Origin: Hormiphora californensis
Taxonomy: Eukaryota > Animalia > Ctenophora
Length of the DNA stretch: 64,000 bases
Reading direction: 5' to 3'
NCBI GenBank assembly: GCA_020137815.1
Contig: CM035357.1
Coordinates: forward strand, 7,812,001 to 7,876,000
Both the position numbers and the translations under genes were made by a program. The notes under the pieces were generated by a model. That model saw nothing but the letters and a program-made list of their open reading frames with translations, was not told the DNA's origin and ran no database searches. Below, in pieces: positions 1-47,989 of this stretch (position 1 is the first letter of the stretch; each line of letters starts with the position of its first letter).

Positions 1-122
1 CCACATATACCTCCTCGTGTGGCATGTCAACCACATGAAAAAAGTTTTAAAAAGTTGAATCTATCTAAAACTAGTATGGTAACAAATCAATATTACTTGA
101 TGGTAGAGCGGAGATAGAGGTC

Positions 123-3100
123 ACTTGGTTGGTAGTCACTGAACTACACTCAGCCAAACACTTGCTTTCTCCCTTATCAAAGATACAACTAGCACAGCGC
201 TCGTAGTCTTCACATGTAGTGCAGATCTGGATAGGGATATGAAAGGTCACACGAGGGGTTTCATTAGAAAAACGATAGAAAGAAGATACGTACGGTGCAT
301 TTGGTGCAGAGTTTCCCTTTCCATCCATCATTGCAGGTACATGTACCACGTACACAGGTACCATGACCACCACACGTCTTCCTTTCACCCTACATAACAG
401 TACGTGTTAGTTTTAAAGAACTAGAGAACCCGTCAACATGTTAGATTGAAAGATGTTTTACAAAATGGAGCTATCAAGATAGCCACTTTAATACTTTATT
501 TACTCACATCGACAACAGAGAGACAGGCATCATTAGAGTATTGGCACGCCTCCCCTGTATATGTCCCATAACATACACACTTCTCTTTCACACACGTTCC
601 TGAGAGGAAACAATATAGCAACATATAGTTATTGACTAGCCGATCTCGTTTCATAATTCGAACTTTCATCACTATGAACCATGGACCTCACCTCGATCAG
701 AACAAGCTTCAACCTTGAAACTATCACCATATCTAACTATCCCCTTGGGACAGTTTAGATGGTCGTACTGACAGTACTTTCCATACGACTGAAACAAAGG
801 ATTGTTAGATCTACTACTTCATAAAACTTTATGGTAACCATGGTAACCATGCTACTTACAAACGGTTGACATTTGCACTTTCCACACTGGCATTCTCCAC
901 GGTTAGAGCACTCCGGCTTGGCATTAGGACTCCGACTCTTTGGGTTGATACATTGGGTAAGAAGGCCATGGCTGCCCATTGCGCATCCACACTTATCACC
1001 TACCCAACCTGTATGAGGAGAGACCTGTATCAGCTATCTGGGACCTGTCAGGCCATTGCTCTGACCGCGGTTCAGGCCAATGCTCTGGTCATATAGTCTA
1101 GGGACCCGGGGGGTCAGGGATGGATCACATACCTTCATTACAGAAGCATGCCCCACCCTGATATGATCCATTACCATTACACTTTGTACTGTCAGGCTCC
1201 ACTGGGAGATCTATAGTGCACATCGTCTCCAGCTGAGGAGGGGAGAAAGAAAGGGTAGAGTGAGGGGGAAGGGGAAGAGGGTTCGTGAAGGGGGGGGAAG
1301 AGGGTGGAGTGAGGGGGGTCTCTTTATAGTTGGCCCTATTGAAGTTTGATGCAGAAGTGCGTTTTAGGAAGTCGTGAGTTACGGCTGGCCTGATAATAGA
1401 AACACCTTGAGGTTTAGGTCACGCTTGTGTATTAAAAACAGAGTACAAGTCGTGCCCTAGGAGACAGAGGGAGAATTAGAGATGGATAGGAGAAAGAGAG
1501 AACGTGGGAGAGAGAATGATAGAATAGTAGAACTATGATCCCACGTATCGTGACTACTATTGGCCGTGATGCGTGACTGTACAACGCTCACGCAGCGTAC
1601 TGCAGTTTGGATCATCAGCGCGTGGAGTTGCTTTCTCTCAGGACTGTGTGAGAGAGAGCTAATGGGTATATGACAAAGAGAGAGGGAGAGAGGAGGGGAG
1701 GGCACAGTCACAGCTTGTACGGCAGATTCTATCTGTGCAGCTGTGATCTGTTAGCTAGCTATAGGTTTTACATATCATGCAGCTTAAGTGGTATCATTTA
1801 GATCACGGCATCACGCCTATTATAAGATGGGAGAGAAGAGGAGAGCTATAGAAAGACGGCATTCATTTTATTCATCGGGTGACATATTACCAATCTGTAA
1901 CTGGAGACATTATTATGCAAAATGCCAAAATATCCAAAGTGACGTTATTGAATTCAATGTATCTAACTTGTACTTGTCAACTACAAACCTCAACGCCAAG
2001 TTGTCCATAAGCAGGGAAGTTGAGAAGGATATCACCCCGTGTATTATTTAGACATCTATCTGCACACACTGTTACTTGATAGGTCAGCTCAGTACCCGCA
2101 GCTACATTCTCACACCTGGGAGAGGAGGGATGGGGTGGGTTACTAAGTTGAAAAATATCGCTTTCGAACATTATGTCTGGTATTCAGTGGGTAATTATCT
2201 ACTGATATCCGGAGTTTCAGCCCAAACGGTTGAGCCACTAAAAGTCGCAAGCCACTTTTGTGACCCTTGTTTTCGGTGAAAAATCGGAAAAATCGAGAAA
2301 AAATTTTAAAATTTTAAAATTTCAAAACATGGAAATTAGTCCTTAGAACATCCCAATACACGTGCAAGACTTAAAAATTGTGTATTCAAAAATTTTCAAC
2401 TTAGCAACCCCTGGTTACTGGTTATTGACTTGTTGAGCAATAGCTGGAGTCAGTGGGATGGGCTTGTGGGATGTAACGTGACCTTTTGAGAACAATATAA
2501 TGGGGTGACATGGTACACACTCCCTATCTAGAAAGGAGATGTATATTGACAAGCTTTATACCTTGCGGATGAATCAGCGGTTGGGTAGCAGGTATAGTTC
2601 ACACTGACCCCCTCAGGGATTATAACTTGGTTCATAGTGGGGAACTCAACCAGCTCCTTGTAGTATTCTTCTAGCTTGAGATCCAGAGAACCAAGATCTC
2701 CAATACCGAATATCTGAACAACGAGGGGGGGGGGTGAACATGTTTGTAAACCCTCTCTCTAATCCTAATAATTACAGAAACCCTCTCTCTAATCAACACA
2801 CCTTTGCTCCAGGTATCATCTCTTTGATCATATCTGTGTTAACTTTGACCCCTGCTACAAATACAGGTATGGTGTTGTTCTGTAAGAGCTGGTTAGCAAC
2901 GTCAACCAGGGTCGGATAGTCCGTGGTGAAGGTGTACTTCCGTGTGTTACCTGGGAGGAAGGGAGGAGTTGGGATTAATGGTTTGTTCAAAACGGGGCGA
3001 GGAGAGAGGGTCCAGCAAGGAAAGTAATGTCTGCAACTTAATTTGAATTTTGAATCGAGGGGCACTTTGACAAACCAAATTCTTGGTAAATAATATTTCT

Positions 3101-4170
3101 AGCTGTATCTGTACCTGTGTTACACTTCTTATCAAATGGTTCAACCATCCCTGCTAGCTGTCCGTCCCCACCCACTCTGGGGTCCGAGGAAAGGACCACC
3201 AGGACCATTTTGTTACTAGCATACCTCCATCCAAATTGATCACATGCCTGGGGAATATGATGGTGTTACCATGGTTACCATGGGTTGCTATGGTAACTAA
3301 CTGTACCGGAAACAGGTACTAACAGATACTGACAGACATGTCTACAATGACTGACTGACAATAGGAATGCAATGATATCAACTGACCACAACACGATGAC
3401 AGACGCTATGACGAGGTTGCAATGTCGTTCTGCCCTACGGGGCAGAGTTTGGCACGCCATAACCTATCTGCACCACCACCACCACCACCACATGTCTAGA
3501 TTTACAGCCCTGTACTTACCAGACTCTGATAGATAGCATCCATAGCGGAATTCCCCTCATCGAACTTGTTAGTTGTATTGGTTACCATGGTATCCAAGAT
3601 GCTCTCATAAATCTTGTCATTGTTATCCAGATAGTTCAGCATCTTGAACGCGTAACTCTCCCCGCACGTCCCTTCACTAAGACACGTGTTCTCTGTCCCA
3701 TTGCCCCACTCAACCACAAATGGGGTGATATCACGGTCTGCAAAGGCCCCATACCCAAAGTTGGTCGTATTAGCCAGGCCTCCCATAGCAATAACAATAT
3801 CTTTAATGGCCGCATTGAATTTAGTTCGCAGGGTGGATGGAGTCTGTTGCTGCAGGATCATCAGATCTATTGGGTAGTTGGGTGTTGCACGTGCAAGTGT
3901 GGGTATAGTGGTGCACTGTCCGGGTCTCATTTTAGCCTTGACCTTCATAGGGGTGATCTGTGTTGCCTTATAGTACCCACTACCCACAAACACATTCTCG
4001 ATAACTTGCTGAGATGGCTGGTAGTTGATCAGGTTACTGCACCCTTCTGTTAGGGTACTGTAATATGTGAGACATCTATAGTTATCCCAATCATCATCAG
4101 CACACCACGCACACTCACTACCCCGTCCCATACATCCATTACCACTCTCTGCGTCCCAACACAAATCATA
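123..4170 (-). CDS. Integrin beta-type ectodomain portion of the giant gene (PSI, hybrid, beta-I, I-EGF1-4, beta-tail)
   Basis: PSI: CMGRGSECAWC..RC..GCSNLI. Hybrid entry: TQITPMKVKAKMRPG. beta-I: NYPIDLMIL, NFGYGAFAD, AMDAIYQSL, DYPTL. Then RCENVAAGTELTYQVTV; I-EGF exons KCNGNGSYQGGACFCNEGWVGDKCGC, ECSNRGECQCGKCKC..YGKYCQYD, CSDRGTCVKEKCVC..YTGEAC, CGGHGTCVRGTCTCNDGWKG; beta-tail CEDYERCASC. The order matches integrin beta subunits. Confidence 0.9.
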
Positions 4171-7100
4171 GCCAACATCCTGGAGGTTCTTAACAGCTCC
4201 CTCCACCACTATATCATAGCTGATCTCATCGACACTACCATCTGTGTAGGTCACCACTACGAAGTAATTCCCGGAATCAGTCTTCTGTAGGTTCCCAATT
4301 TCCAGGAATGTACCACCCTGTTTTATGTAGTACCTACCATCCTGCGATGTGATCTGATACCTGACACCGTCTATTGTATAGTACCACTGGATCTGATCTC
4401 CTGGGTTTATAGAGAACGGGATGATCAGCTCAATGTTACCATCTTCAGTGGCCTCGCACACAGAGTGACTTGTAGCCTCCACATAGGAACATTTATCACC
4501 CGTCTTCTCTTCTTCCTCTTCCTCATCATCCTTTCCTCCTCCTTCAAGGTCAGGACGGTTAATACCACCACCACCACCACTGCTGCTAACCTCGACCTTC
4601 CAAGGATAGGTGATCACATAGTTCTCGTTGGATGTGTAGGTGACCTGTCCGTAGTACGTATCCCCATCACCCCTACTAACACTACTGATCACCAGCACCC
4701 CATCCTCTAGTTTGTACTTGTACCCGTCTATCTTAACAAACTGTTTAGCACCGTTAAGTATGGTATACCACAGAACTTGTTTCCACCCTGTGTACAGCCC
4801 AACAGATACCTGACACTCTTTATCAGTAGTACATTGCTTAGTTTGAAGGACTGGTTGGGGGATGACCGTGACATTAACAATTGAAGATGTTGTGACTCCT
4901 GTTGAAGGGTCAAGGTAAACCCCGTGGTACTGACCAGCGTCACTCTTCTGCAGGTTCACGAATGTGAGTGATCCATAGGTCTGTTGTAGGTAGAGGAACA
5001 CTTATTCTCAATAGGAGCCGAGGGACTGTGTGGTTGGGTCTTGTTTCAGCCAGGATAGCGGGGCAGGGATATCTAGACCACTGGATACTGTCAGAGGATT
5101 ATCCTTCATACCATACATACAACAGGGATAGTTCAAGAGGGTATACCCTGTATGTGTATGTGACTTCTTCCCCTGTAGTAGTTGTTAGCTTTGCGTAGTA
5201 ACTACCAGCATCATCCTCACCAAGGTTCTTTATAACTAGATTAGAGCCAGGTAACTCAAACTTAGTATTGGCTGAGACTTTGTCTGTCAGAGTGAACTGG
5301 TACCATCTGATCTTCTTTATCCTCTCATCAGGGGACAGTTGGACAGTGCTCCCTACAACCCGATACACAAACACAGTGACAGATCTGGAGAGGCTCTGCT
5401 CCGGACATGACTCTATACACACTCCCTCTACCAGGAAAGGGATGGACTCTGGGGACAGGCACAGGTTTTAGGTTGGCAGCTAGTGAAGGTATTAGAGTCC
5501 ACTGTCTCGGGGCAGGTTCGTGTCCTGGGTGCACAGTACTCATAGTACTCCTGGTTAGTGGGACATGTGATAGGTGTAGCATCAATACATGTGTCATAGC
5601 TGACACACCACCCATCAGTGTTTAGATAGGGTTTACTAGAGGGGCACCCACAGACATCAGTTAGACATGATGAGGGACATGGTACCCCCATATCAGTACA
5701 CGTGGTGTTACACAGTGCACACTCGTTAGTGTATAGCACCATATTAGTGTCACCACCACACCCTCCACTGGGGCAGTCCTCCCGGGTAATACACCGACCA
5801 CTATACTCAATAGGGGCCTCAGTAGGGCACCCACACACATTCCTCCTGCACTCACAACTGGATACAGCCCCACCCTCACAGCTCTCCTGACAAGGTGCAC
5901 ACGTGGTAGGGCCGTGATACACGTACCCCTCCACCCCATACTGTGCACAGGGGTCTGCAGTGTTAGCAGGGCAGGCTGCACGTGCAATACACTCCCCGTT
6001 ATGGAAGACAGGGGTCTCAGCGGGACATGCACATACACCCTTCCTGCATTCAAAAAGGCAGATTTGGTTGGAACATGTCTCCTGGCAGGGTGCACAGGAT
6101 GTGTCGTAGTATCTCATGGTGGCGGGACAAAGACGAGGTGAACCAGCACCCAGTACTATCAGTTGGAATATGAAACTCTCGTCCCTCCTGCCCTCCGTGA
6201 AGTAGATATTGACCCTGGTGGGGGGAGTGAGCTTAACTTGTAGTGAATATAATCTAAAACTATTATGGGAGGGATGGTGGGATATTAGTGAACTCGAGGC
6301 GAGAAACCAGTGATATAAACTAAACCCTGGCCATCAATAACGAACCTATAATAATATCCCTGAGTCCAGGCCTCTAGTTACCATGGTAACCACTAACCTG
6401 TAATAACCCTGATCCAGTTCAACAAGTTCCTGTTTAAACAACTCTCGTGTAGTATAGGATGGTAGCTGAATACTGGTTGTGCTGTTGAAGTAGGTCCAAG
6501 TGTAGAAAAGGGAGTTGGGTTTATTGTTTACTGACAGGGTCAGGTTCTGTCCCTCGTATCCTGTGTGGAATGTACGGATGATAGGGGTGGGAAAGGGGAA
6601 GAGGGTTTGGTTTGTTGTGGCTAACTAGACATGATCTGCGAGGAGTTTCGGGAGGGAAACAGACTACAGAGGATCTCAGAATCATATTCAAATCATGGTA
6701 GGTCTCATTAATTTGTAAAAAGAGATGAAAACATCCGTAATCACTGGATCAGAGACAGTGAAAGTAGTTCTCCCACACATTGTGGCGACAGTGTAATTTT
6801 AACTGCTGACATGACAGCAAGCAGTGCAGTAAGCAGTGCAGTAAGTGCATGTTTTTGACAGTTGATTGAATTAACTCATCATCTCGTGAATGAGAAACAG
6901 AATAAACACAGTTTTGTTTGGTTTTTTAGTTTGTAAAGCATTAATAGTTGTTCTGATTTAGAACTCGAATCTCTAACCGCAGAGCGTGGAGTGATTAGGC
7001 TTGCTGAGATAGATTTACCTACACCTAATTCTAATTCTGTTTTTCAGCATTTCTGATATGGTCAGCAAGTTATCTAAAATAAAGCGCATGATGGGATGGA

Positions 7101-10100
7101 AACAGAAAGTCAAGAAGCCATTTATTGTTATGATCGGTGATGTTGGTACCGGTAAATCTACCATCGTTGAAAAGATAGCCGAACAATCGGGACGAAGTGG
7201 TGATGCTACTTTCAGTCTTACTACCCAAAGTGAGATATTCTGGAGCTATGATGGCTCTATGATAATAGCGGACACCCCGGGCTGTAATGCAATACAAGAC
7301 CCCTTCACACATAACCAATGGGTTGCCAGCGCTATAAACTTTGCTCCTGTTTCCAAGATCTTCATCATTGTTAAAGCCGAGACCAGGATAGATAGCGTGG
7401 TCTCTAAGGTGCTTCAGTACAACTCTAAGCTGCTGGAGATTCCTGAAGAGTTAGTGGGTGTCCTAGTATCTCACATGGATACTGTTAAATATATTGACAA
7501 GCAACTGAAAGATAATATCCTGGAATTTTGCCAGATAAAAGACGTAGTTTTGACGAGTAAGGATGAGGCACGTCATCTCTTACTGAGAAATCTCAAGAAA
7601 ATGAGCGAGAAAACGAAACCGATAGACTTTCAAATTGACGGAGAATCATTTCTCAAGATATTCCGGGTGGAGCCGAGAGAGAGGAGAGCACTGGCCGCTA
7701 TTGACAGGCGAGTTGACCACTTTCTAACTATGAAGGAGGATTTCGATAGCAACATTATACCGGCATACCAGGGTAAAGATCTGATAGATGTCCTCTTTGC
7801 ATTCCAAGCCTGGATGGCTGATATATTGGCTAAGATGCAGAGTGATATGTGTGTGGAGCTGGGTTATGACGCCACTTTCTCAGGTCCTAACGGCAACACA
7901 GAGGCGGCACATTGTGCAATGTTAGCTAACAGACTCCGTGTTATAATGTTTGAAATCAGGAAACTAACAGCCCATCACGCCCAGAGGAGTGCCGTGGATG
8001 CCAGGGCGTGTAATCACTGTGGGTTTGTGTGGGTGAAGGTGGAAGGGTGCGAGGGGGCTACAATCTGTGGTAATAAATCTGGAGATCTGCCAACACCAGT
8101 TGATGTGAGGAACACTGCTTTTACCACTGTTGGAAGGTTCAAATTCAACTGGAACTCTGTTAAACTGTTGATAGAGAGGACTACCAACACTGAGGTACAA
8201 CTCCAGGCCACCGCAGGGAAGGACAGGGTGGGGTGTGGGAGAACAATAACCTGGTGCAACATGCCCAGAGTCAACACATTAGATCTAGAGGATGAGAGTC
8301 AGGCACCTCGACAGGATGGGAGTGAGGTCCTTCCCAAGTGTGATGGGTACAAAGATAAGTTGGAGTTAGAGATAGAGGCTAAAACTGAGAAGTTACAGTT
8401 GTCAGATAGTAAACCTGGACCTAGCAAGTAATGTATGGATATATCTAGATCATAGCAGTGACTGACCTTCATCATGGCAATAATCTATGGACGAAAGAAA
8501 CCACCTTCAAAAACAGCCCAACCCCCCCCCACTCAATTACCTATGACGATGGCATCCCCACCGGGAAGGAAGTTGACTTGAAGGTAGGTCACATAGTATC
8601 TGATAGAGTCAGGGTAGATCAGCTGAGCAATGTAGTAGCCTTGTTCGTGTAGTTGCACACCATACAACTCCAGGGAGTCTACACCAAACTGAGGGAGGGG
8701 AAGATCACAGTGTCAGAGCCGTAGTGGAATACAGTGTCAAAATAAGTTTTGTTGCGGGTTTATTGTCGTCGCGTTAATGAGCTTTGAAATAATATTTTAT
8801 TATATTTTGTTAATTGACTGTTGATTTTCCACAAACGCATTTCCAATTTTCAGGACAGAATAGGTTCCTATTACCTGAAGCCTTGGAGTTTCCTTTGTAA
8901 GACGTACAAACAACCCCCGATCACTGTTCCTCTTATAATGCCAACTAACACTTGTGTAACCCTTGGGCATGTCTTTGAACCTGAAATATTAGAATAATGA
9001 GTCAGACTAGGCGAAATCAAAAGGGCTTAATCACCATTTGCATTTGAAGTGAATGTCAAGGAAGAAACCCAGATGTACATTGTACCCTAAAAAGTTTCTC
9101 CCTATCCCATACCTGATAACTACATCATAGTTCACATAAGACTCCAAGACCCTGAAGGGGGATGGCAGCCGATCCACAGTCACCCTGTATACATGTCTAA
9201 ACGTCTGTAGATCAGTTTCAACTTCTGCTTCATACACCCCCGCATCACCAAGTGTAACCCGTGTGAACACCAGGGAGGTGGCAGTAGGGAGGATAGTTCC
9301 ATTATTATCACCGGATAGTTTAGATCTCACCCCTGATTGGGACACCCTGTACCAGGTAGTGGTTGTAGTTGTGGGTTCAGGGAGGACCAAATCCACCTCC
9401 TGGTCCTCTATCACGTTCATAGTGTACTCCTTAACTACTTGTGTCTAGAGAGAGGGAGGCATGTTAGAGGGGTATGTTAGAATGTTAGGTGAGGTAGAAA
9501 CAATAACTATTTTTCAGTCATTGGGCATGGATGATATGATTCAGGAGAAGGGATAAAAAGAAGGGGAGAAATATATGGCGGTCGGCGGATCATAGAGTGA
9601 GAAAATAAAATGGTGCCATTTTCATTTTCAAGAAAAGTATAAATGGTACCCACTTAAGAAGTTTAATGAAAGTTAAATGGGTAGGAGAAAAAGAAAGAGG
9701 TCAACTCTAAAACTCATTAGAAGAAGGTAGAAAAAAGAAGAAACAGCAACAAAATGGAGCATTCAGAGATTTCATGCAGCACAGGTCATAGCCCCAACTC
9801 ACATCTTCAACAAATATCTGGAAGGCATGTTCAGACTGCTGCTGGGATCCAGGGTATTGTACAATTGCAATGTAGATCCCATCATCAGGTCGGGTAACGG
9901 AACTTATACGAACACTGTACGCATCAACCTGGGGGGGGGGGTAGTTTATTGTGGGGTTAGTGGGATTTGTTAGACTCATCTATGTCAATTGAATAGCCGT
10001 GTGATAGCAGATCTCCCTCTCTGAAATTGTACCTGTGTCACCCTACTCTGGTCCAGATCGAGAGGTCTGAGAAGTCCATTTTGTACTCGATACCACGTCA

Positions 10101-40100: not shown

Positions 40101-41436
40101 GAGTATTTGAACCTGTTATTCCCTCAACTCTGAGTAGAACGGGACGGAAGAGCGTTCCCTCTACCGGCATCGATCCCGCACCTAATATTTGAATGAGTTC
40201 TTTGATCGTGAAACCAAGGCCAACTAAAAAGAACAATTTTTTGGGGCCTATCAACCCTAGTTTAAAACCTCATTATATAGTGAGAATTGACCCTAGTTTA
40301 ATACTTAGTTCCTCCTCCAGAAAACTTACCAGCAGGATCTCGGACGGACAGGACAAAGACTACTTGGGTCTTTTGGGAGCCATAATCCAGGATGGCAACA
40401 TAAACCCCAATATCCTGACTGCAGGTCGTTTGAATTTGCATATGGTGATTCGTGATACTGAACTTGCCTGTAGAAAATTTAATAAACATGGTGATTAGTT
40501 GTTCTTATGCTGCTAGGATTTGAATATTAATGAGCGGCATCCTACTCCTCATATAATAGAGCTGTGAGATATAAACACAACCGTCAACCCAACAAGTCAT
40601 TTTCTGTACACACATCTATATGCAAACGATCCAGAGGGGCAAGTGACTTTGTTTTTTAGCTTTTTCTTTCCTAAATTCCCAGGAGCTCTGCATTATATAT
40701 GCTAGTTTCAATTAGGTTATCTAACCTCATCACCCCATATTTTAGAGTTTCATCATGAAAATGGTTTTACTACTCCTGACACTACTTCTACCAGCACTGG
40801 GTAGCGACCAGCAACTTTTCAATTCTCATCGGCGATGTTTTCAAGTACTCTAGCGAATAATACTGCTACCAAAGCCATAGATGGAAAATTCACCGCATCA
40901 AATGCACACTCGGTATGCAACGATAAGGAACAAGAGATCTGGATGGAGCTAGAGTTGAAAAACCTTGCTTTGGTTACCAAGGTTACCATCTACCCATCTC
41001 ATACTAATGATCAAGAAAATACCTACGAACGACCTGACGGAGCGAAAATATATCAGGTATATGTAACACTTGATCTGCCAAGCCCTAGTAGAGGTCCCAA
41101 GCATTTATTTAATGAATATTATTTCAGGTGACTCCCGAGGGAACGGAGGTATTTTGTGGATCGTATCATCCTGACTGGGATATCAAACCAGAATACTACG
41201 AGGTCCCTTGTAAACAACAAGACGTGCTCAGTGCGGGATTGATGATTCGTTTAACCAAGACCGGAACCGCATGTTTGCATTTTAAGGAAATTGAAGCTTA
41301 TGGCTCGATAGTGGGTAAGTCGAGAAGAGGACAGCATGGGTAACTGGTAAATTATAAGGGATCTTTGAAATGAAAATTGAAAAAGGGGAAGAGGGTAGGA
41401 AAAATAACTTCTGTTGGGCCCAGAAGTTTTGATAGA

Positions 41437-41478
<42 letters not shown>

Positions 41479-44400
41479 TCCTGGCTGTAGATGCTTACTA
41501 CTCTTCAAATTACCTGGAAGGACTGAGAGGTTAACAAATCGTCCTGATCTCCGCTTGTACCACTGTGTTTTGTAGCCCTGAGGTAGATTCTCTGGGATCG
41601 TCAGACTGGCAGGATGACCCTCATCCACTACAACTCTGTCTCGGTATTCTGAAACAAGTGTTGTTGTTTGCAATGTTTGTTTGCTTGTTTGTGTGTGTTT
41701 GTGTGTATGTTTGTTTGTGTTCCCTACCTTCTTTACAGTAGATAACATTGTAGATTACAGATAGTCCACTGGCCAGTTTTGCAATGTATGTTCCTGAAAA
41801 CACATCATACTACTTACTATTCAAATTGTCAGTGCTACATCACCTAGCAACTACACCTGCACGTGCAATTATTAGAGCAACTTAGAAACCTCACTCCCAG
41901 TTGCAGTTTTGGGTACTAAGGGAAATTCAATTCTGCACGTGCATTCTTTTACTTTTGTCCTGATGTCTAACTCTTCAACCCCAAGCGCTATTCGGCAACG
42001 GTCATCTGGGTCCGGAAGATCTGCTGCGGTCAGGGAGCAGGCTAGAGAATATATGACAGTTTACGCCAACGTGTTCAAGCGAGCCAATCAACGACTGCTG
42101 ATAGCTTTACCCAACGTCGCCCAAGGGTGATTACTCCAGTCGAATATAGAAATCTCCGAATCGGCTACATAGCGGCCAAGTTTGCACGTGATGAGTTTCT
42201 GGAACAGCACTGCAACTCCATGACATTGATCTCTTAAATTCGCACCTTGACATTGTCAGGAAGCCCAGAGCGTACAACAACATGGGTAGGGAGAAAGTGA
42301 GAAATAGGCTAGGAACGGATGGTGCAGATGATGTCAGCGTTCCCTAATCAAGCTACCATTTCCCCGAAATTCGCCCGTAGGGCGAACGGGCCTACTAGTA
42401 AGTCATAATGGTAAGTTAAGAATAGGTTTCTCTACCCTTTCCTCCTTATTTAAAGTGAGAGTGGACCGAGTCAGAATTGGATAAAATTGTTGTAGGTAGT
42501 AGAGATTAGTTTTCTGAGCATTTTGCGTTTTTGCCGCTCAAAATCGACCCACCCATCACTGAGATATCTTTATTATGTTGGGAGAATTCCTGCTGGATCA
42601 ATATTTATCAAACAGGATAGAAACAATCCTTGTGTTTTACTAACACATTCTTTAAATTTTGAATATGCTGGCTTGCATTGCCCTGCTTCTGTGCATGGAC
42701 ATGTCAACCTCACTGCTTATATTCAGAATGTGTTAGTAAAACACCACGATTGTTTCTTTTCTGTTTTATACATACTGATTAAACAGGAGTTCTCCCAACA
42801 TAACAAAAATATCTCAGTGATGGGTGGGTCGATTTTGAGCGACAAAAACGCAAAATGCTCAGAAAGCTAATCTCTACTACCTACAACAAACTTGTCCAAT
42901 TCTGATTCTGTCCACTCTCACTTTAATCCTGATCAGATCTCATTGATGATAACTTGCCTAATAACTATCTCTATAATTAAAGGCACTATATTAAACCATT
43001 ACCGGCCATTTCAGGAAGTACTTCAACCAGTCTGAGGATCCTTCCTCCATCGACCAGCCTCTCTCTCGCTGTGGGACGAACTACAACGTTCTGGCTCCTC
43101 CAGTCCTTCTTAAACCACCTCACCTGCCCAGTTGTACGGGGGTTCAGGTCCAGGGTGCCTGTAAGTATATGAGTTTATTAATAATAGAACTTGAACCACA
43201 GCAGATTGTGTTGCTCATACTGTCTGAATAACAAACAACACAAGATATATACCTCCAGTGAAGAATGCCTGTTCGGTAGAAGTTGTCAGGACAGAAAGTT
43301 GGAAGCGATGTACCACAGAACCAATACGACACATGTAAATTCCTGGAAATAATAGGATTGTAAATTAAATTAAACACTAAACAGGTAAATTGGTTACTAA
43401 ATCATGTTATTTCGTCACAGTTATAGGTACCTTCCATATCTTTCCCAACATTATGCAAAATCAGAGAAGTTCCATCCAGACTTATAACTGTCTCCCTTCC
43501 CCTGTTCCGATCCACATAAATCTGTAACGGATAACATGTGATCACTAGAGTATTATAATTTATTTGAAGATCCCATTCTATGAAATTATCTCAAACATTA
43601 CAAAACTTCATGTGTCTACTCATTCTCACCCGCATCTGTGTCTCTGTGCCATCCCTGTCAACCCTGAACCAGGAGGGAGCCACATCAGTATCATTCTCTA
43701 CAGTCATTACAGCACTCCTTCCAATTGCAGCTTCCACTGACACGGCATCTCCCGCTAGAGAAGATCGCAGTGACCTACCCGCTAAAAGGAAACACACTCT
43801 TTCTTTTCAGCCTTAAAACAACGTGTCTGTTGTTCAGTCGTGTTTGTTTGGTTTCGCAGTTGGTTTGTAAAGTGTCAGATTATACTTAAAGAATTTGTGT
43901 GTGTCAGGGCTTACCCTGGTCTGAGATTTCAAGGAGAAAGTTTTCTGTTCTGATAGAGCCGTAGAAACCCATCTCTACCGTGTACTTTCCTACAAGTTGG
44001 GAAGTATGCAAATAAGTTTACTAATACACAGACGATCTTCTTCTATATCTAATGCAAATTTGCACGGAAATGTGACACCCTATCGTCAATGTGACGACGT
44101 GATCCGTCAATGTGACGACGTGATCCGTCAGCGTGACGACATGATCCGTCAGTGTGACGACGTGATTCGTAGGTATCACGTATCACACGTGTTGAGAACT
44201 GCTTGCGACTCACATCACATGTATAAAAGGGAGAGAAAGAGAGAAAAAGAGAGGGATCACATCACATAGCATATAGCAGACAGGCAGAGAGAAAAACAGA
44301 CCCCTCGATTTGCGATCGGTACGATCGCCCCAGTTTTGCTAGTTAAATTAAACACCCACCCACCTGAATCAGTAATGACCAGGTTGTTCATTCTCAGGGT

Positions 44401-47186
44401 GTGACCTCGGTTCAGATAGTTGAATTTAGAGCTGTGTGTTATTCGTTGTAGATTACCCCCGTCGTCACGATACCACCGGTATGTCTAGAGAGACAACAAT
44501 AATTAGCTTTCTAGTGTTTCCGCTTTGTTGTTTTATAGACTTTAGATGCTTGTGTAATATAAAAACTTTAGATGCTTCAAGTTTGTTTATCTCATCTTTA
44601 ATTTTATTGTCATAATATCATGCTGCAACATACCTCTCCCTCAACGGTGGGTGTAAGCAGTGCCTGTTGCCCAATACCCAGCATTTGCACGGGGTGCGTG
44701 TAACCACTCTTCTTACTTATCATCAGCTCAAACTTGGTGTAGGACACATCCCCACTTAGGTAGGTCAACTTGGCAATGTAGAGACCTGGGAGAGAGAGGG
44801 AGGTTAGTGACCCGAGCGTGGGAGCGGGAAGAGCTAGGTATATTAGCTGATCAACATATATTTTTAGAACACATCAATTATCTCAGTACTTGTGCCACGT
44901 CTAACTTCTATAATCACTTCCATTATAATCACTCCATTTACCAAACAACAAAGACCAGAGAGAAATCATGTGAAATAATTTGATTGATTTCGAACCATTA
45001 TCTGAGTTCGTTAGAATTTCGTCTTCTAGACATATTTTGTATATAAATGCATTCATTGCGTTCAAATTCGCCACAAAGATTTTGGTTCTTTTCCTATATT
45101 TATGCCACAACAGACACACCCTCTAGTCCGTAACAGTATGTACCAGTATGCTGTGAGCGTTTACTCAGCTAATGAGGCTGACAGGCCCCACTCGAGCACA
45201 GGACACTACATCCCCTCCTCCAATCTCTCTTCGCAATCAGTTGCCAGTCACAGAACTGGGTCTGGTCATCTTGAGGTAAGCAGTTGTCAAAGGTTCTGCT
45301 GGATCCTACTGGATATCCCAAGCATTATTATTTTCTGCCCTAAATTTCCCAACCATAACATATCATCGTTTTAGACGGTCTTTAGGAGCAGAAAACTTTC
45401 GGACAGGGAAACATTTGACTACTTCGGCTCCTGTCCCTTTCTTCCCTCGTCTGAAGAGTCACTACAAGAAAGCGAAGAGGTACTCCAATCTCTATGGAGT
45501 GTAGGTCGTCGTTCAAATGGAAAACACGGTCACCAGAAACAGTATTTTGGGGGATTGGCATACAAGACATTCAATATTGCAGGTATATATTATTGTTGTA
45601 ATTTATTAATTATGATTCTAGTTCTTCCGGCACTATCGATGATATAAATAATCACTAATCAATCGTAATGAATATTGCCATTTCAGGAGCGATCTATATG
45701 ATAGATAGCCGCGTTTTCGAATCATATCCCGATTCCCTGCTGGGGTCACCTGATATTGACCAGTTTTATTGCATGGACAGAAGGATGTACTTCATAGAGC
45801 ACAGTCGCCATGTCTTTGAGAAAGTTGCCAGATTCTACACCCATGGAGATGCCCTTACACCACCCTGCTGCATCCCTAAAGACTTCTTTGAGCGATCCAT
45901 GGAGTTTTACAGGTTAACAAACTATTATAAAAACGCAGCCGCCACGCCCCTAGAGGAATTTGTTCCAAAGACCTGGAGGGAGAAGGTCTACGCTTCGATT
46001 TTCATACCCGAATATTCCAAGCTATCTCTGGTGTACAACCTGGTAGACACGGTAATTATAGTGATGGGCACTATTTTCTTTATCCTGGAGACGATTCAGG
46101 GCCTGGGAGACGGTATCTATCAGGCAGCAAAGGTTGTCAATGTAGTAGTTAATATTCATGTTTTGATTCAGTTGACCATGTTACTGTTGGTGCATCCAAA
46201 CAAAATAGAACTTTGTAAATCGCCCTTCACCTGGATTGATCTGATTGTTCTATCGACCTTCCTTGTGGAAAAAATCTTCACAGAGTCTTATCAAAACTTT
46301 GGGGTTTTCCGGATTTTGCGACTCTTTCGTGTCTCCATCATCACGAAGCTGTTACGAATGTCTAACAGCGGTAGAAGCATGCTAGCCTTCCTCAGCGTAT
46401 GCCGTCCTGAATTGGGCCTCATCTTCATCATCCTAGCCATGGCTGTCCTAATCTTTGGGCCGTTATTTCATTTTGTGGAGAAAGATACCTTCCCTAACGC
46501 GTTTGAGGGCATGTGGTTTTGTGTGGTAACTGTGTCCATGGTAGGCTACGGGGATCAGACACCGGAAACGGATCTTGGAAAGTTACTAGCGTGTGCCTAC
46601 ATAATTAGTAACATCACCATCTTGGCACTACCCATCTCACTGTTACTCGCTAAATTTAGCAAACAAAATAAAGGAAAGTAACTAGCGCTGGGGAAATTAA
46701 TACTTTTGAAACAATTCCACACTTCTTGCTCTATTAAACGGAAATTATTTATTCAGTTACAATTAAAAAGACTCCAACTCTAACTTTATTCTATGAAGTA
46801 TGTTATATGGATGTTATACCTTGATCTTCCCGGGTGAGAAAGAGGATCATGAGAAGGCGTTGATCTTTTGATATCTTAAACTTTGCCGACTGTTCTATCT
46901 GATAGATCGGTTCAGCAACAGGGCCCTTGAACCAATCCACGGTCTGAAACAATAAGTATTAATAATTGAATTGATGTTTGTCGGTTACATTGAATACAGT
47001 GAAGTTACAGTGAAGTTGCAGTGAAGATACTTAATATATTGTGTTTACCATGAGACCAGATTTTCCAGGTTCCACGGCGAGGGAAACTTTCACAGTCCCC
47101 TCATCCAACCAATACCTCTGCACCTCCCCTGAAGTGGTCGTCACACCACCCTGCAGCAGTGCCAAGACAAGGATGAGAGGGAGCAT
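123..47186 (-). CDS. Giant multi-exon Ig-array / TIL / integrin-beta-ectodomain chimeric protein (3' end continues beyond position 1)
   Basis: First exon 47049-47186 encodes a signal peptide (MLPLILVLALLQGGVTTTSG). Dozens of GT-AG-bounded minus-strand exons follow, each giving Ig-like segments (W-Y/F strand, then D-x-G-x-Y), and lead into TIL repeats (about 5400-6130) and integrin-beta homology (about 123-4170). Junctions checked by eye (e.g. 46820/44785, 8541/6561, 6398/6214) join in frame. Not every junction was checked. Confidence 0.8.
5400..6130 (-). CDS. Four tandem TIL-like (trypsin-inhibitor-like) Cys-rich repeats within the giant gene
   Basis: ORF 5428-6117 has repeated C..Y..C.PCQ.TC.....C...C...VC.CP..P....G.CI....CP units. 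The fourth unit is completed across an apparent frameshift near 5451. Confidence 0.75.
6130..46943 (-). CDS. N-terminal array of about 50 Ig-like domains (many short exons) of the giant gene
   Basis: Recurrent exon peptides such as TTWYRV..SLVFTRVTLGDAGVYEAEV (9031-9420), TLVLEKLQDTDAGVYLC (11689-), RWYYME..SLVIGKFTQDTKGYYKAVV (28569-), YKWLRD..MQIKNLMVQDEASYTVY (38877-) and VDWFKG..LMILFLTREDQGLYIAK (46943-44785). The count is an eyeball tally of G-x-Y F-strand motifs. Confidence 0.8.
7058..8431 (+). CDS. Intronless TRAFAC-class P-loop GTPase with C-terminal RBR RING2(Rcat)-like Cys cluster; nested antisense in host intron about 6562-8540
   Basis: 457-aa ORF with G1 GDVGTGKST, G3 DTPG and G4-like SHMD. 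C-terminus CNHCGFVWVKVEGCEGATICG...GCGRTITW. Confidence 0.85.
   Translation: MVSKLSKIKRMMGWKQKVKKPFIVMIGDVGTGKSTIVEKIAEQSGRSGDATFSLTTQSEIFWSYDGSMIIADTPGCNAIQDPFTHNQWVASAINFAPVSKIFIIVKAETRIDSVVSKVLQYNSKLLEIPEELVGVLVSHMDTVKYIDKQLKDNILEFCQIKDVVLTSKDEARHLLLRNLKKMSEKTKPIDFQIDGESFLKIFRVEPRERRALAAIDRRVDHFLTMKEDFDSNIIPAYQGKDLIDVLFAFQAWMADILAKMQSDMCVELGYDATFSGPNGNTEAAHCAMLANRLRVIMFEIRKLTAHHAQRSAVDARACNHCGFVWVKVEGCEGATICGNKSGDLPTPVDVRNTAFTTVGRFKFNWNSVKLLIERTTNTEVQLQATAGKDRVGCGRTITWCNMPRVNTLDLEDESQAPRQDGSEVLPKCDGYKDKLELEIEAKTEKLQLSDSKPGPSK
11987..12598 (+). mobile_element. Non-autonomous Helitron-type element, copy 1
   Basis: 5' A|TC (tcatactattattaaagc), 3' hairpin TTCGCCCGTAGGGCGAA followed by CTAG|T, no TSD. 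Ends are shared with the copies at 18902 and 41805. Confidence 0.7.
13720..13822. repeat. (CT)n / CTCTGCTAT compound microsatellite
   Basis: Directly visible. Confidence 0.9.
15211..16513. mobile_element. Foldback non-autonomous DNA transposon, TTAA target duplication (Kolobok/T2-MITE-like)
   Basis: ttaa|GGGTACACC...GGTGTACCC|ttaa. Near-perfect inverted arms of about 610 bp surround a spacer of about 80 bp, which is why mirror ORFs appear on both strands. Confidence 0.9.
17315..17742 (-). mobile_element. 5'-truncated non-LTR retrotransposon (LINE) 3' end
   Basis: ORF2 C-terminal zinc knuckle LLTGHGNLNYH...CNLCG..ETVKHVLTECP, a (GAA)n tail, and a 13-bp TSD TGCATCGGCCTTT at 17302-17314 and 17743-17755. 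Confidence 0.85.
17975..18102. repeat. Near-perfect 128-bp palindrome (hairpin) just upstream of the nested GPCR start
   Basis: TCCCCCTTTTTACAGAGCCCTGCC...GGCAGGGCTCTGTAAAAAGGGGGA. Confidence 0.85.
18165..23243 (+). CDS. Multi-exon class A GPCR with signal peptide, SRCR-like domain and multiple LDLa repeats (GRL101/RXFP-like 7TM, no LRRs seen); nested antisense in host intron about 17199-23746
   Basis: Exon 1 MKWLIFLCCVIFQG (18165-18204); SRCR-like GLVIDEGFTERHAMAVCRSLNY (about 18495-18631); LDLa exons at about 20089-20263 and 20381-20624. The terminal exon (20689-23243) has LDLa units ([27 protein letters not shown]) and a 7TM with GDLLTGCYL, IVWLP and LPLNSVINPCLY. Some internal exon boundaries are uncertain. 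Confidence 0.85.
18902..19544 (-). mobile_element. Non-autonomous Helitron-type element, copy 2 (inside an intron of the nested GPCR)
   Basis: On the minus strand it starts TCATACTATTATTAAAGCAAATAGGGAAAT (identical to copy 1) and ends TTCGCCCGTAGGGCGAGCGGGCTTACTAG|T. Confidence 0.7.
23380..23618. repeat. Head-to-head palindrome of a tRNA-derived (SINE-like) unit
   Basis: Symmetric about CCCTATATAGGG (centre 23512/23513). Each arm has a GGGTTTG...CAAACCC acceptor-like stem, an A box TAGCTTAGTGG and a B box GGTTCAATTCC. The right arm lacks the central anticodon-arm segment. Confidence 0.8.
24102..24748. mobile_element. MITE-like element with G10-TGACAC terminal inverted repeats carrying an internal minisatellite
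   Basis: GGGGGGGGGGTGACAC ... GTGTCACCCCCCCCCC, flanked on both sides by TATTA. Confidence 0.6.
24400..24678. repeat. 10-bp minisatellite (TGTAACACT[A/T])n
   Basis: Directly visible, about 27 units, with a few inverted units at about 24700-24731. Confidence 0.95.
29699..30158. repeat. 20-bp minisatellite (TCTACCATCTCACATGTCCC)n
   Basis: About 23 near-identical units, intronic. Confidence 0.95.
40755..41343 (+). CDS. Small secreted F-type lectin / F5-8 type C-like protein (2 exons, apparent frameshift after the signal peptide); nested antisense in a host intron
   Basis: MKMVLLLLTLLLPALG signal peptide at 40755, then in another frame SSTLANNTATKAIDG..AHS..IWMELEL..VTKVTIY. Intron 41058-41127, then FCG..YEVPC..CLHFKEIEAYG. 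Confidence 0.65.
41805..42398 (+). mobile_element. Non-autonomous Helitron-type element, copy 3
   Basis: A|TCATACTA start. The last 70 bp or so resemble copy 1 and end GAAATTCGCCCGTAGGGCGAACGGGCCTACTAG|T. Confidence 0.65.
42454..42922. mobile_element. MITE with long TIRs and TTAA target duplication (Kolobok/T2-like AG...CT ends)
   Basis: ttaa|AGTGAGAGTGGAC...GTCCACTCTCACT|ttaa, with imperfect inverted arms of about 150 bp. Confidence 0.85.
44083..44168. repeat. 21-bp tandem repeat (CGTCAATGTGACGACGTGATC) x4
   Basis: Directly visible. Confidence 0.85.
45668..46681 (+). CDS. Shaker-family voltage-gated K+ channel subunit (T1 + S1-S6), divergent, intronless CDS; nested antisense in host intron 44786-46819
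   Basis: T1 (NIAISG..YPDSLLG..YFIEHS..F..VARFY..G.L..P), S4 FRILRLFRVSIITKLLR, pore WFCVVTVSMVGYGD, S6 ILALPIS. Confidence 0.9.
   Translation: MNIAISGAIYMIDSRVFESYPDSLLGSPDIDQFYCMDRRMYFIEHSRHVFEKVARFYTHGDALTPPCCIPKDFFERSMEFYRLTNYYKNAAATPLEEFVPKTWREKVYASIFIPEYSKLSLVYNLVDTVIIVMGTIFFILETIQGLGDGIYQAAKVVNVVVNIHVLIQLTMLLLVHPNKIELCKSPFTWIDLIVLSTFLVEKIFTESYQNFGVFRILRLFRVSIITKLLRMSNSGRSMLAFLSVCRPELGLIFIILAMAVLIFGPLFHFVEKDTFPNAFEGMWFCVVTVSMVGYGDQTPETDLGKLLACAYIISNITILALPISLLLAKFSKQNKGK

Positions 47187-47684: not shown

Positions 47685-47989
<305 letters not shown>

What the first reader, a model, noticed from the sequence alone, without database searches (positions are those of the whole stretch)
123..47186. 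Giant chimeric integrin-beta: about 50 Ig-like domains plus TIL repeats fused in front of a complete beta ectodomain
Seen: one signal-peptide exon, then an uninterrupted run of same-strand Ig exons leading into TIL repeats. In ORF 3502-5001, Ig domains continue directly into PSI/hybrid/beta-I within one reading frame, so the Ig-integrin fusion itself needs no splicing assumption. Established: integrin beta subunits are about 800 aa (beta-4 is longer only in its cytoplasmic tail) and begin at PSI right after the signal peptide. Inference: a protein of roughly 5,500-6,500 aa in which an integrin-beta scaffold anchors a very long Ig rod (about 200 nm if extended at about 4 nm per domain), perhaps a long-range adhesion, tether or mechanosensory link. 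I know of no described integrin with this architecture.
Basis: partly seen in the sequence, partly recalled or inferred. Interest (0 to 1): 0.95.

Follow-up and report, generated by a model that had tools for sequence, protein, structure and literature searches.

The report
Giant Ig-array integrin-beta-like gene
A comb-jelly gene really does fuse immunoglobulin-like domains and cysteine-rich modules to the front of an integrin-beta-like receptor that has lost its metal-binding sites, an arrangement conserved in other comb jellies; that all ~50 Ig domains form one giant protein is likely but unproven.

Summary
On the minus strand there is one signal-peptide exon (ATG 47186) and a same-strand series of Ig-like units: 38 HMM cores against 0 on the plus strand, about 52 by reading. 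Four TIL-like 10-Cys modules follow, then ORF 3505-5001, where Ig-like domains run in frame into PSI and the beta-I domain.

The rest of the beta subunit follows with canonical GT-AG introns. The TM helix and an NPIY tail lie left of the window.

The Ig-TIL-Ig-PSI-beta-I fusion is conserved. It occurs in a Pleurobrachia bachei gene model (92% identity), a 2408-aa UniParc model and four uninterrupted environmental ORFs. Two of the three large introns that host opposite-strand genes are bridged by direct evidence.

Caveats:
- No transcript data were obtainable.
- The 6.5-kb gap (17.2-23.7 kb) is only phase-compatible, and an in-frame Met plus hydrophobic stretch at 17306 could start a shorter gene or isoform.
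- The assembly has five single-base frame breaks at 5002-5461, probably consensus errors.
- All MIDAS, ADMIDAS and SyMBS residues are replaced, so this is an integrin-beta-like protein, not a canonical one.

No paper found describes this architecture. I rate it a new variant of a known kind.

The parts
47049..47186 (-). Exon 1: ATG, signal peptide (MLPLILVLALLQGG...) and the first strands of Ig unit 1; donor GTAAAC, phase 0
46820..46943 (-). Exon 2: middle of Ig unit 1 (core Trp ... REDQ-G); acceptor TTTCAG, donor GTATAA in the Gly codon (phase 1)
44634..44785 (-). Exon 3: completes Ig unit 1 (G-LYIAKL...), so a single domain spans the 2-kb intron that holds the Kv channel gene
23747..44785 (-). 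Ig-like array, units about 1-35. Most units are split into an N-half exon (core Trp) and a C-half exon (L.I...D.G.Y)
17198..23746 (-). Largest gap (6.5 kb): a putative intron with phase 1 on both sides. It holds the plus-strand LDLa-GPCR gene and a retroelement tail (17469-17753). This is the one junction without bridging evidence
17197..17306 (-). In-frame Met at 17306 followed by a hydrophobic stretch, just upstream of acceptor 17197: candidate alternative start and signal peptide for a shorter gene or isoform
8541..17197 (-). Ig-like array, units about 36-47
   Evidence: unit 46 and the end of unit 47 are colinear with P0153 and P0152
6561..8540 (-). Intron hosting the plus-strand GTPase ORF. 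The flanking exons are contiguous in one ORF in relative P0152
6398..6560 (-). Exon: Ig unit 48, N part
5446..6214 (-). Exon: end of Ig unit 48 plus four TIL-like 10-Cys modules (5971-6135, 5773-5970, 5587-5772, 5446-5586, the last continuing to 5405 in another frame)
5002..5461 (-). Stretch with frame breaks relative to all relatives: an extra C and an extra T near 5440-5450, an extra G at about 5105, an extra G near 5020 and one base missing near 5005 (in-frame TGA and TAA between them). Ig unit 49 (5105-5461) is open only in a different frame
3520..5001 (-). Open frame: C-half of Ig unit 50, Ig units 51 and 52, PSI (4036-4164), N part of beta-I (3517-3879). QQQTPS stands where MIDAS DxSxS should be (3835-3852)
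2802..3247 (-). Two beta-I exons (3115-3247 and 2802-2950)
1989..2713 (-). Two hybrid-domain exons (2562-2713 and 1989-2115)
508..1232 (-). I-EGF exons (1133-1232, 860-1008, about 692-815, 508-599)
97..226 (-). Beta-tail exon. The next exons lie left of the window in L004: about 7984-8072, TM about 7594-7835, Cys-rich juxtamembrane 7380-7513, NPIY 7043-7209, further tail to 5315 and probably into L003 and L011
7058..8431 (+). Nested GTPase gene (MMR_HSR1)
20068..23243 (+). Nested LDLa plus rhodopsin-type GPCR gene
45668..46681 (+). Nested Kv-type channel gene (BTB_2 plus Ion_trans)

Best explanation
This is a real, lineage-conserved ctenophore gene for a type I membrane protein. The genome matches Hormiphora californensis in size and scaffold number. 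A complete but metal-site-less integrin-beta-like module forms the membrane-proximal end: PSI, hybrid/beta-I, I-EGFs, beta-tail, TM, a Cys-rich juxtamembrane segment and a long tail with one NPIY. It is preceded in the same polypeptide by four Ig-like domains, four TIL-like Cys-rich modules and further Ig-like domains. In this genome the most likely gene starts at ATG 47186 and threads about 52 Cys-poor Ig-like units, giving roughly 5,600-6,500 aa. Three opposite-strand genes and one same-strand 7TM ORF are nested in its introns. Inferred mechanism: a long Ig rod provides reach and binding surfaces. The beta-like module serves as stalk and membrane anchor rather than as a cation-dependent ligand site. 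NPIY couples the tail to PTB-domain adaptors of the talin/kindlin type. The frame breaks at 5002-5461 are most likely consensus errors of the long-read assembly. Shown: the domain content, the fusion, its conservation, the splice sites of the 3' half, and continuity across two of the three nested-gene introns. Inferred: unity of the whole array, function, and adaptor binding.
For: Fusion in one frame. Only 3 of 1.84 billion representative proteins match at E<1e-30; each of these (P0002, P0003, P0004) carries Ig-like domains ahead of the integrin part. P0002 is the P. bachei model (92% identity, 1453 aa) and maps colinearly from 5691 to 95 and on into L004 with TM and NPIY. P0003, P0152 and P0001 are single uninterrupted ORFs running Ig-TILx4-Igx4-PSI-beta-I (P0001 holds only the Ig-PSI-beta-I part). 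P0152 joins window 8604-8539 directly to 6561 onward, across the GTPase intron. P0153 adds unit 46. Ig unit 1 is split over exons 1-3, across the Kv intron, with strong splice sites. Strand asymmetry of Ig hits. A chain built without any Ig information carries 33 of 35 Ig hits in frame; 57% of its introns are phase 1. No TM helix lies in an Ig frame, and apart from ATG 47186 only one signal-peptide-like start does, at 17306. Ig fold. TIL. Nested intronic genes are a described feature of the H. californensis genome, which was assembled with wtdbg2 from PacBio reads and has 3.2% heterozygosity (PMC8527503). There is no second copy in the genome.
Against: No transcript evidence. The only listed run holds none of the locus. 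The junction 23747 to 17197 rests on phase compatibility and good splice scores only. An in-frame Met plus hydrophobic stretch sits right before acceptor 17197. As assembled, the frame is broken at three places and has two stops. No relative reaches upstream of unit 46, and a far-upstream exon found no homologue. The exon chain is my own dynamic-programming model; it always returns some chain and puts false exons into the large introns.
Confidence: 0.6

Rival explanations
1. There are two transcription units, or an internal promoter. An upstream gene (47186 to about 23730) would encode a secreted rod of about 35 Ig units ending shortly after 23747. A second gene or isoform would start at Met 17306 with its own signal peptide and encode about 17 Ig units, 4 TIL-like modules and the integrin-beta-like module (roughly 3,000 aa).
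For: Met 17306 plus a hydrophobic core (AWILCTIYFLFL) is in frame with Ig unit 36. It is one of only three such hits among minus-strand frames of 60 aa or more between 5.7 and 47.3 kb; one of the other two is the true signal peptide. It lies at the far side of the largest gap, which holds another gene and a retroelement. A stop follows 17 nt after donor 23747. No relative bridges this junction.
Against: Acceptor 17197 (TTTTCAG|G, score 8.6) and donor 23747 (score 7.0) are as good as validated sites, and both are phase 1. The hydrophobic stretch is encoded by a T/C-rich tract upstream of that acceptor and may be only a translated polypyrimidine tract. The c-region is long and atypical. Nested genes in introns are common in this genome. 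The other two large introns are shown to be internal.
Confidence: 0.3
2. The locus is a recently inactivated pseudogene in this species or haplotype. The frame breaks at 5002-5461 are real, so no Ig-array to integrin fusion protein is made here.
For: Three frame switches and two in-frame stops relative to five relatives. The assembly was polished with arrow and pilon.
Against: All five are single-base length differences in short runs (CC, TTT, GG, GG, AA). They cluster in 460 bp, while the other ~1.5 kb of the exon and some 20 further exons are intact. The shifted Ig unit is still 90% identical to P. bachei, and the 5 residues between the last two indels are identical. The changes sum so that the frame is restored each time, which random decay would not do. 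The assembly derives from noisy long reads of a 3.2% heterozygous animal, where short reads map poorly.
Confidence: 0.15
3. The fusion is an assembly chimera or a chance open frame.
For: None found.
Against: The same order of domains occurs in one frame in at least five independent sequences from other sources, with 38-92% identity.
Confidence: 0.01

Closest known systems
Canonical integrin beta subunits (best solved matches: human beta-2, beta-7, beta-6, beta-1, beta-3)
   Same: PSI, hybrid/beta-I, I-EGF repeats, Cys-rich tail domain, one TM helix and an NPxY motif, in the canonical order. The relative P0152 matches beta-2 at E=5.5e-33 from the PSI domain to the end of beta-I.
   Different: It does not begin at PSI: Ig-like and TIL-like modules precede it. 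MIDAS, ADMIDAS and SyMBS residues are all replaced, and this is conserved in every relative. There is no HDRRE-type membrane-proximal motif; a Cys-rich juxtamembrane segment stands there. The cytoplasmic tail is several hundred residues or longer. Pfam's tail and cytoplasmic models do not match.
Integrin beta-4
   Same: It is the only described beta subunit that is much longer than about 800 aa (established knowledge). The protein here also has a long cytoplasmic tail.
   Different: The beta-4 extension is cytoplasmic only (FN3, Calx-beta). Here the main extension is extracellular and N-terminal, and the tail has no Pfam domain.
Hemicentin (fibulin-6) and other giant extracellular Ig arrays
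   Same: Dozens of tandem Ig domains together with a VWA-fold domain and EGF-type modules in one extracellular protein (established knowledge).
   Different: Hemicentin is secreted, its VWA domain is N-terminal, and it is not of the integrin-beta type. The Ig units here mostly lack the disulfide pair, and the protein is membrane-anchored.
Dictyostelium Sib proteins (integrin-beta-like A-E)
   Same: VWA-like domain, TM helix and NPxY tail without a canonical integrin context. There is a weak Pfam vWA_SIBA-E match (E=1.8e-4 in P0152; precomputed for P0001).
   Different: The protein here has true PSI and I-EGF modules and a much stronger Integrin_beta match (124 bits). The Sib match is below its cut-off.
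TIL-domain proteins (Ascaris trypsin inhibitor, VWF and mucin D assemblies)
   Same: Ten-Cys spacing, with all Cys aligned to 1ATA.
   Different: There is no VWD/C8 context. Pfam TIL is not matched at E<=0.1. The fold prediction failed.

Membership tests
Integrin beta subunit | Beta-I (VWA-type) domain matching Pfam Integrin_beta | tested here: met
   40.3 bits in ORF 3505-5001 and 31.4 bits in exon 3041-3265 (cut-off 24.8). 124 bits in relatives P0152 and P0153.
Integrin beta subunit | PSI domain directly before hybrid/beta-I | tested here: met
   PSI_integrin E=1.8e-4, 21.6 bits, below the 27-bit cut-off. The Cys/Trp pattern is invariant in 5 relatives. The alignment to beta-2 starts at its residue 13.
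Integrin beta subunit | MIDAS DxSxS plus ADMIDAS and SyMBS acidic residues | tested here: not met
   QQQTPS stands in place of DLSYS, RT in place of DD, SS in place of the TDD Asp, and GNSA in place of the DAPE segment. All relatives show the same.
Integrin beta subunit | I-EGF repeats | tested here: met
   I-EGF_1 at 35.1 bits (cut-off 26.1) and EGF_integrin at 29.3 bits (cut-off 27) on separate exons.
Integrin beta subunit | Beta-tail domain | tested here: inconclusive
   A Cys-rich exon at 97-226 is colinear with P0002, but there is no Pfam match.
Integrin beta subunit | Single TM helix and cytoplasmic NPxY | tested here: met
   TM exon and NPIY exon in L004, with GT-AG introns matching P0002. 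This is motif-level only; Pfam's cytoplasmic model gives no match.
Integrin beta subunit | Mature protein begins at PSI; total length about 800 aa | tested here: not met
   At least six Ig-like domains and four TIL-like modules precede PSI in frame, here and in relatives.
Integrin beta subunit | Heterodimer with an alpha subunit | not testable with these tools
   Needs biochemistry.
Immunoglobulin-like domain | Two-sheet beta sandwich of Ig topology | tested here: met
   AlphaFold2 pLDDT 92.9 on alignment A2. Foldseek top hits are all Ig superfamily domains, TM up to 0.86.
Immunoglobulin-like domain | Pfam Ig-clan match above cut-off | tested here: inconclusive
   I-set at 28.1 bits (cut-off 23.7) for unit 52. 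Upstream units give only E=0.006-0.1, below cut-offs.
Immunoglobulin-like domain | Core Trp and the inter-sheet Cys pair | tested here: not met
   Trp is nearly invariant, but the Cys pair is absent from most units. The fold is kept without the disulfide.
TIL (trypsin-inhibitor-like Cys-rich) domain | Ten Cys in the family spacing | tested here: met
   Alignment A3. All Cys align to Ascaris trypsin inhibitor 1ATA, E=0.018; the next hits are LL-TIL.
TIL (trypsin-inhibitor-like Cys-rich) domain | Pfam TIL match, or the TIL fold | tested here: inconclusive
   No Pfam family at E<=0.1. No single-sequence PDB hit. The AlphaFold2 model has pLDDT 43.7 and is unusable.

The most novel reading that the evidence does not exclude
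One polypeptide of about 6,000-7,000 aa is made, a roughly 200-nm rod of some 52 disulfide-free Ig domains. In it an integrin-beta module that lost all metal sites before the sampled ctenophore lineages split has been turned from a ligand-binding head into a membrane-proximal stalk and force transducer. It would work without cation-dependent ligand binding, and possibly without an alpha subunit, and would couple through NPIY and a large repeat-containing tail to the cytoskeleton. That would be a ctenophore-specific long-range adhesion or mechanosensory system.
Probability: 0.3. Interest if true: 0.9.

Novelty: new variant of a known kind. Interest (0 to 1): 0.78.

Why it matters
As far as I know, and as far as five literature searches showed, integrin beta subunits have never been described with an N-terminal extension; they begin at PSI. 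Here an early-branching animal lineage has kept a beta-type ectodomain, TM helix and NPxY tail. It has discarded the metal sites that define integrin ligand binding and has placed Ig-like and TIL-like modules in front. This shows that the beta scaffold can serve another purpose. It gives a concrete gene for asking how ctenophores, which lack much of the usual matrix and junction toolkit, attach cells over distance. It is also a test case for gene models in a genome rich in nested genes.

Tried and rejected
- RNA evidence. The look-up of sequencing runs listed one run of the same species label, with no words of the locus. Laying it on 3400-9399 gave two 91-base pieces only. None was listed that holds the stretch.
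- The JGI metagenome scan with alignment A1 found nothing.
- A homologue search with the far-upstream segment 25582-26256 found nothing.
- Pfam on the Cys-rich exon and a single-sequence PDB search gave nothing. AlphaFold2 on three TIL-like modules gave pLDDT 43.7.
- My first exon-chaining run overfitted, producing hundreds of tiny exons. I replaced it with fixed splice matrices from 13 validated introns, a 12-bit intron penalty and a 36-nt minimum exon. Even so it places false exons antisense to the nested genes, so the chain shows consistency and proves nothing.
- A 26-nt 'intron' that would remove the stops at 5002-5010 was rejected as too short and as contradicted by the orthologues.
- Multi-Ig proteins P0015, P0030, P0054 and P0149 do not map to the window.
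- A second genomic copy that could explain the 92% identity of P0002 does not exist.
- The spliced model was never joined into one protein for any search or fold. All searches used single exons by reference or natural database proteins.
Full report
**Where the window lies**

The window is G000:C8:7,812,001-7,876,000 of a 110.7-Mb assembly in 45 contigs. The size and scaffold number match the published Hormiphora californensis assembly, 110 Mb in 44 scaffolds (PMC8527503). The closest protein in the databases is a Pleurobrachia bachei gene model at 92% identity. I therefore take the organism to be H. californensis or a very close relative. This is an inference; the tools gave no name.

**Checking the observation**

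- ORF 3505-5001 on the minus strand translates without a stop.
- In that frame it carries I-set (28.1 bits, cut-off 23.7), PSI_integrin (21.6 bits, below cut-off) and the first half of Integrin_beta (40.3 bits, cut-off 24.8).
- I built an HMM of the repeated unit from seven whole units and iterated it on all stop-free six-frame segments.
  - At E<=1 it finds 39 hits on the minus strand and none on the plus strand. All lie between 46.9 and 4.2 kb, with one gap at 16.7-23.8 kb.
  - Hits that cover the domain core number 38 against 0 at E<=10.
- An HMM made only from the Ig domains of relatives from other organisms still finds 18 units upstream of 6.7 kb at E<=0.1, and none on the plus strand. 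The upstream units are therefore the same kind of domain as those provably fused to the integrin part.
- Reading the exon chain unit by unit gives about 48 units before the Cys-rich modules and four after.
- AlphaFold2 on an alignment of 19 units (A2) gives pLDDT 92.9. Foldseek places the model among Ig superfamily domains: CD147, FGFR2 Ig-C2, Dscam, 2B4 and JAM, with TM up to 0.86.
- Most units lack the Cys pair and fall below Pfam thresholds.

**The Cys-rich modules**

- Exon 5446-6214 holds four repeats with ten Cys each.
- Pfam finds nothing at E<=0.1. A single-sequence PDB search also finds nothing.
- A profile of the four repeats has Ascaris trypsin inhibitor as its best PDB match (1ATA, E=0.018), followed by two LL-TIL entries. 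All Cys are aligned.
- The fold prediction failed, with pLDDT 43.7.
- 'TIL-like' is therefore reasonable but weakly supported.

**The integrin part**

- Exons downstream of the ORF match Integrin_beta positions 127-186, I-EGF_1 and EGF_integrin.
- The P. bachei model P0002 (1453 aa) maps colinearly from window 5691 to 95 and on into the left flank, locus L004, down to about 5926. The introns are canonical GT-AG.
- This adds a TM helix, a Cys-rich juxtamembrane stretch and a tail exon with NPIY.
- The 2,024-nt intron between the beta-tail exon (donor at 97) and the next exon holds a same-strand 351-aa multi-TM ORF with no Pfam match.
- A 2408-aa UniParc model in the same 90% cluster as P0152 (P0153) continues the tail. 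Its tail pieces match L004 5833-5315 and repeated modules in L003 and L011, in order.
- The cytoplasmic part may therefore be about 1,000 aa, and the locus may reach some 25 kb left of the window. This rests on an automatic gene model and colinearity only.

**Metal sites**

- Aligned to solved beta-2, the relative P0152 has HQVRS where MIDAS DLSYS stands, RA for the ADMIDAS DD, SQGNS for the DAPEG segment and YNN for TDD.
- The window has QQQTPS (3835-3852), RT, and SS before DP.
- All five relatives share the QQQ/QHQ motif.
- The loss is therefore old and conserved. By homology this is an integrin beta. By the defining metal-dependent site it is not, and I call it integrin-beta-like.
- The genome has about five other Integrin_beta loci and no second copy of this one.

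**Conservation of the fusion**

- Of 1.84 billion representative proteins, only three match the ORF at E<1e-30.
- With the word-indexed searches, the set is as follows:

| Protein | Source | Length | Identity to the ORF unless stated |
|---|---|---|---|
| P0002 | P. bachei model (EukProt) | 1453 aa | 92% |
| P0152 | ENA, 117-kb contig | 1099 aa | 45% (to P0002) |
| P0003 | ENA, 24-kb contig | 1029 aa | 43% |
| P0001 | JGI | 612 aa | 48% |
| P0004 | ENA | 452 aa | 38% |
| P0153 | UniParc model | 2408 aa | in P0152's 90% cluster |

- P0003 and P0152 are single uninterrupted ORFs that run Ig, four TIL-like modules, four Ig, PSI and beta-I.
- They end in junk exactly where the window has an intron after '...AKV'. 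They are therefore genomic ORFs from species with fewer introns.
- This excludes an assembly chimera and shows the fusion without any splicing assumption.

**Is the whole array one gene?**

Three large introns hold plus-strand genes:

| Nested gene | Coordinates | Pfam evidence |
|---|---|---|
| Kv-type channel | 45668-46681 | BTB_2, Ion_trans |
| LDLa-GPCR | about 20068-23243 | Ldl_recept_a, 7tm_1 |
| GTPase | 7058-8431 | MMR_HSR1 |

Nested intronic genes are a described hallmark of this genome. What bears on each junction, and on the array as a whole:

- **Kv intron.** Ig unit 1 is split over exon 1 (signal peptide plus first strands), exon 2 (46820-46943, ending ...REDQ-G with a donor in the Gly codon) and exon 3 (44785 onward, G-LYIAKL...). 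All splice sites are strong. One domain thus spans the Kv intron.
- **GTPase intron.** P0152 reads ...YLQVNFLPGGDAIVIG-YEGQNLTLSVNN... in one ORF. This joins window 8604-8539 directly to 6561 onward.
- **GPCR gap (23747 to 17197).** I have only phase compatibility (1 and 1) and good site scores (7.0 and 8.6; validated sites average 6.5 and 7.1).
- **Exon chain.** It uses codon usage plus splice matrices from 13 validated introns, with no Ig information, and carries 33 of 35 Ig hits in frame. Of the array's introns, 57% are phase 1. The method always yields some chain and inserts false exons in the big introns, so this is consistency, not proof.
- **Signal peptides and TM helices.** No TM helix lies in an Ig frame. 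A broader scan found three Met-plus-hydrophobic starts: the true one at 47186, one in an unrelated frame at 15892, and one at 17306. The last is in frame with unit 36, just upstream of acceptor 17197.
- **The hit at 17306.** It may be a translated pyrimidine-rich tract, or it may be a real internal start. Hence the main rival: two units or an alternative promoter. I give that 0.3, against about 0.5-0.55 for one continuous gene.

**Frame breaks**

- Against P0002, P0003 and P0152, the window switches frame near 5446-5461 and near 5105. It has TGA and TAA at 5002-5010.
- Base by base the differences are these:
  - an extra C and an extra T about 8 nt apart;
  - an extra G in GG at about 5105;
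  - an extra G near 5020;
  - one base missing from an A run near 5005.
- Between the last two, the shifted frame reads APIEN, identical to P. bachei.
- All five lie in 460 bp, and they sum to restore the frame.
- The Ig unit between the breaks is still 90% identical to P. bachei.
- The assembly was made with wtdbg2 from PacBio reads of an animal with 3.2% heterozygosity, where short reads map poorly for polishing.
- I judge consensus error at about 0.75-0.8 and real lesions at about 0.15. I could not test this with reads.

**How it most likely works**

Shown:
- a signal peptide;
- a long series of Ig-fold units;
- TIL-like modules;
- a beta-like ectodomain without metal sites;
- one TM helix;
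- NPIY.

Inferred:
- The Ig rod gives reach and binding surfaces. At about 4 nm per domain, 52 units would span about 200 nm if extended.
- The beta-like module acts as a stalk and perhaps as a docking site for a partner.
- NPIY recruits PTB-domain adaptors as in integrins (established for canonical beta tails; not tested here).
- The units are only 10-24% identical to each other. This fits a fixed rod of the titin or hemicentin type better than Dscam-like clusters of alternative exons.

**Novelty**

Five literature searches and two papers read for this point gave no description of an Ig-extended or MIDAS-less integrin beta in ctenophores. Automatic models exist (P. bachei sb/3460908; UniParc UPI0004EA6B84). 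The latter is visibly chimeric, with a GPCR at its N-terminus, and it skips the I-EGF-to-TM part. I rate the finding a new variant of a known kind.

**Limits**

- The spliced model was not joined for any search or fold. Searches used single exons by reference or natural database proteins.

Noticed in passing
window 7058-8431 (+): Intact 457-aa ORF with a GTPase domain (MMR_HSR1, E=3e-6), nested in the intron between Ig units 47 and 48 of the host gene.
   Followed up: partly
window 20068-23243 (+): LDLa repeats followed by a rhodopsin-type 7TM region (845-aa ORF plus upstream LDLa exons), antisense inside the 6.5-kb gap of the Ig array.
   Followed up: partly
window 45668-46681 (+): Single-exon Kv-type channel (BTB_2 plus Ion_trans), nested in the intron that splits Ig unit 1.
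   Followed up: partly
L004 8575-9627 (-) (= C8:7,810,575-7,811,627): A 351-aa ORF with several hydrophobic helices and no Pfam match. It lies on the same strand as the host gene, inside the 2-kb intron between the beta-tail exon and the next exon.
   Followed up: partly
L004 5315-5833, 979-2123; L003 3276-7213; L011 4537-4954 (-): Exons colinear with the long C-terminal tail of P0153, including a Lys/Glu-rich stretch and at least three copies of a helical module of about 190 aa with no Pfam match. The host gene may extend about 25 kb left of the window.
   Followed up: partly
window 17469-17753 (-): Open frame with a CxxC...HxxxxC tail typical of the end of a non-LTR retrotransposon ORF2, inside the 6.5-kb gap.
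   Followed up: no
L004 2600-4900 and window 12246-12512 (-): Two direct copies of about 1 kb of a repeated element in the tail introns (open frames beginning HHLKLRYRKRSSGG...), and a related copy inside the Ig array. Probably a dispersed mobile element.
   Followed up: no
window 29697-30159, 24389-24677, 47688-47989: Tandem repeats: a 20-nt unit x 23 (97% matches) and a 10-nt unit x 29 in introns of the array, and an (AG)n tract of about 300 nt just upstream of the start codon.
   Followed up: partly
window 55696-59144 (-): Filamin/ABP280 repeat ORFs (E=8e-25), the next gene upstream on the same strand. ORF 51095-52159 (-) of 354 aa has no Pfam match.
   Followed up: no
G000 C13:3.017-3.018 Mb, C13:5.261-5.267 Mb (two tandem), C7:6.184 Mb, C10:7.201-7.203 Mb, C2:4.102 Mb: Other integrin-beta loci in the same genome. 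I did not check whether any of them also has Ig exons in front.
   Followed up: no
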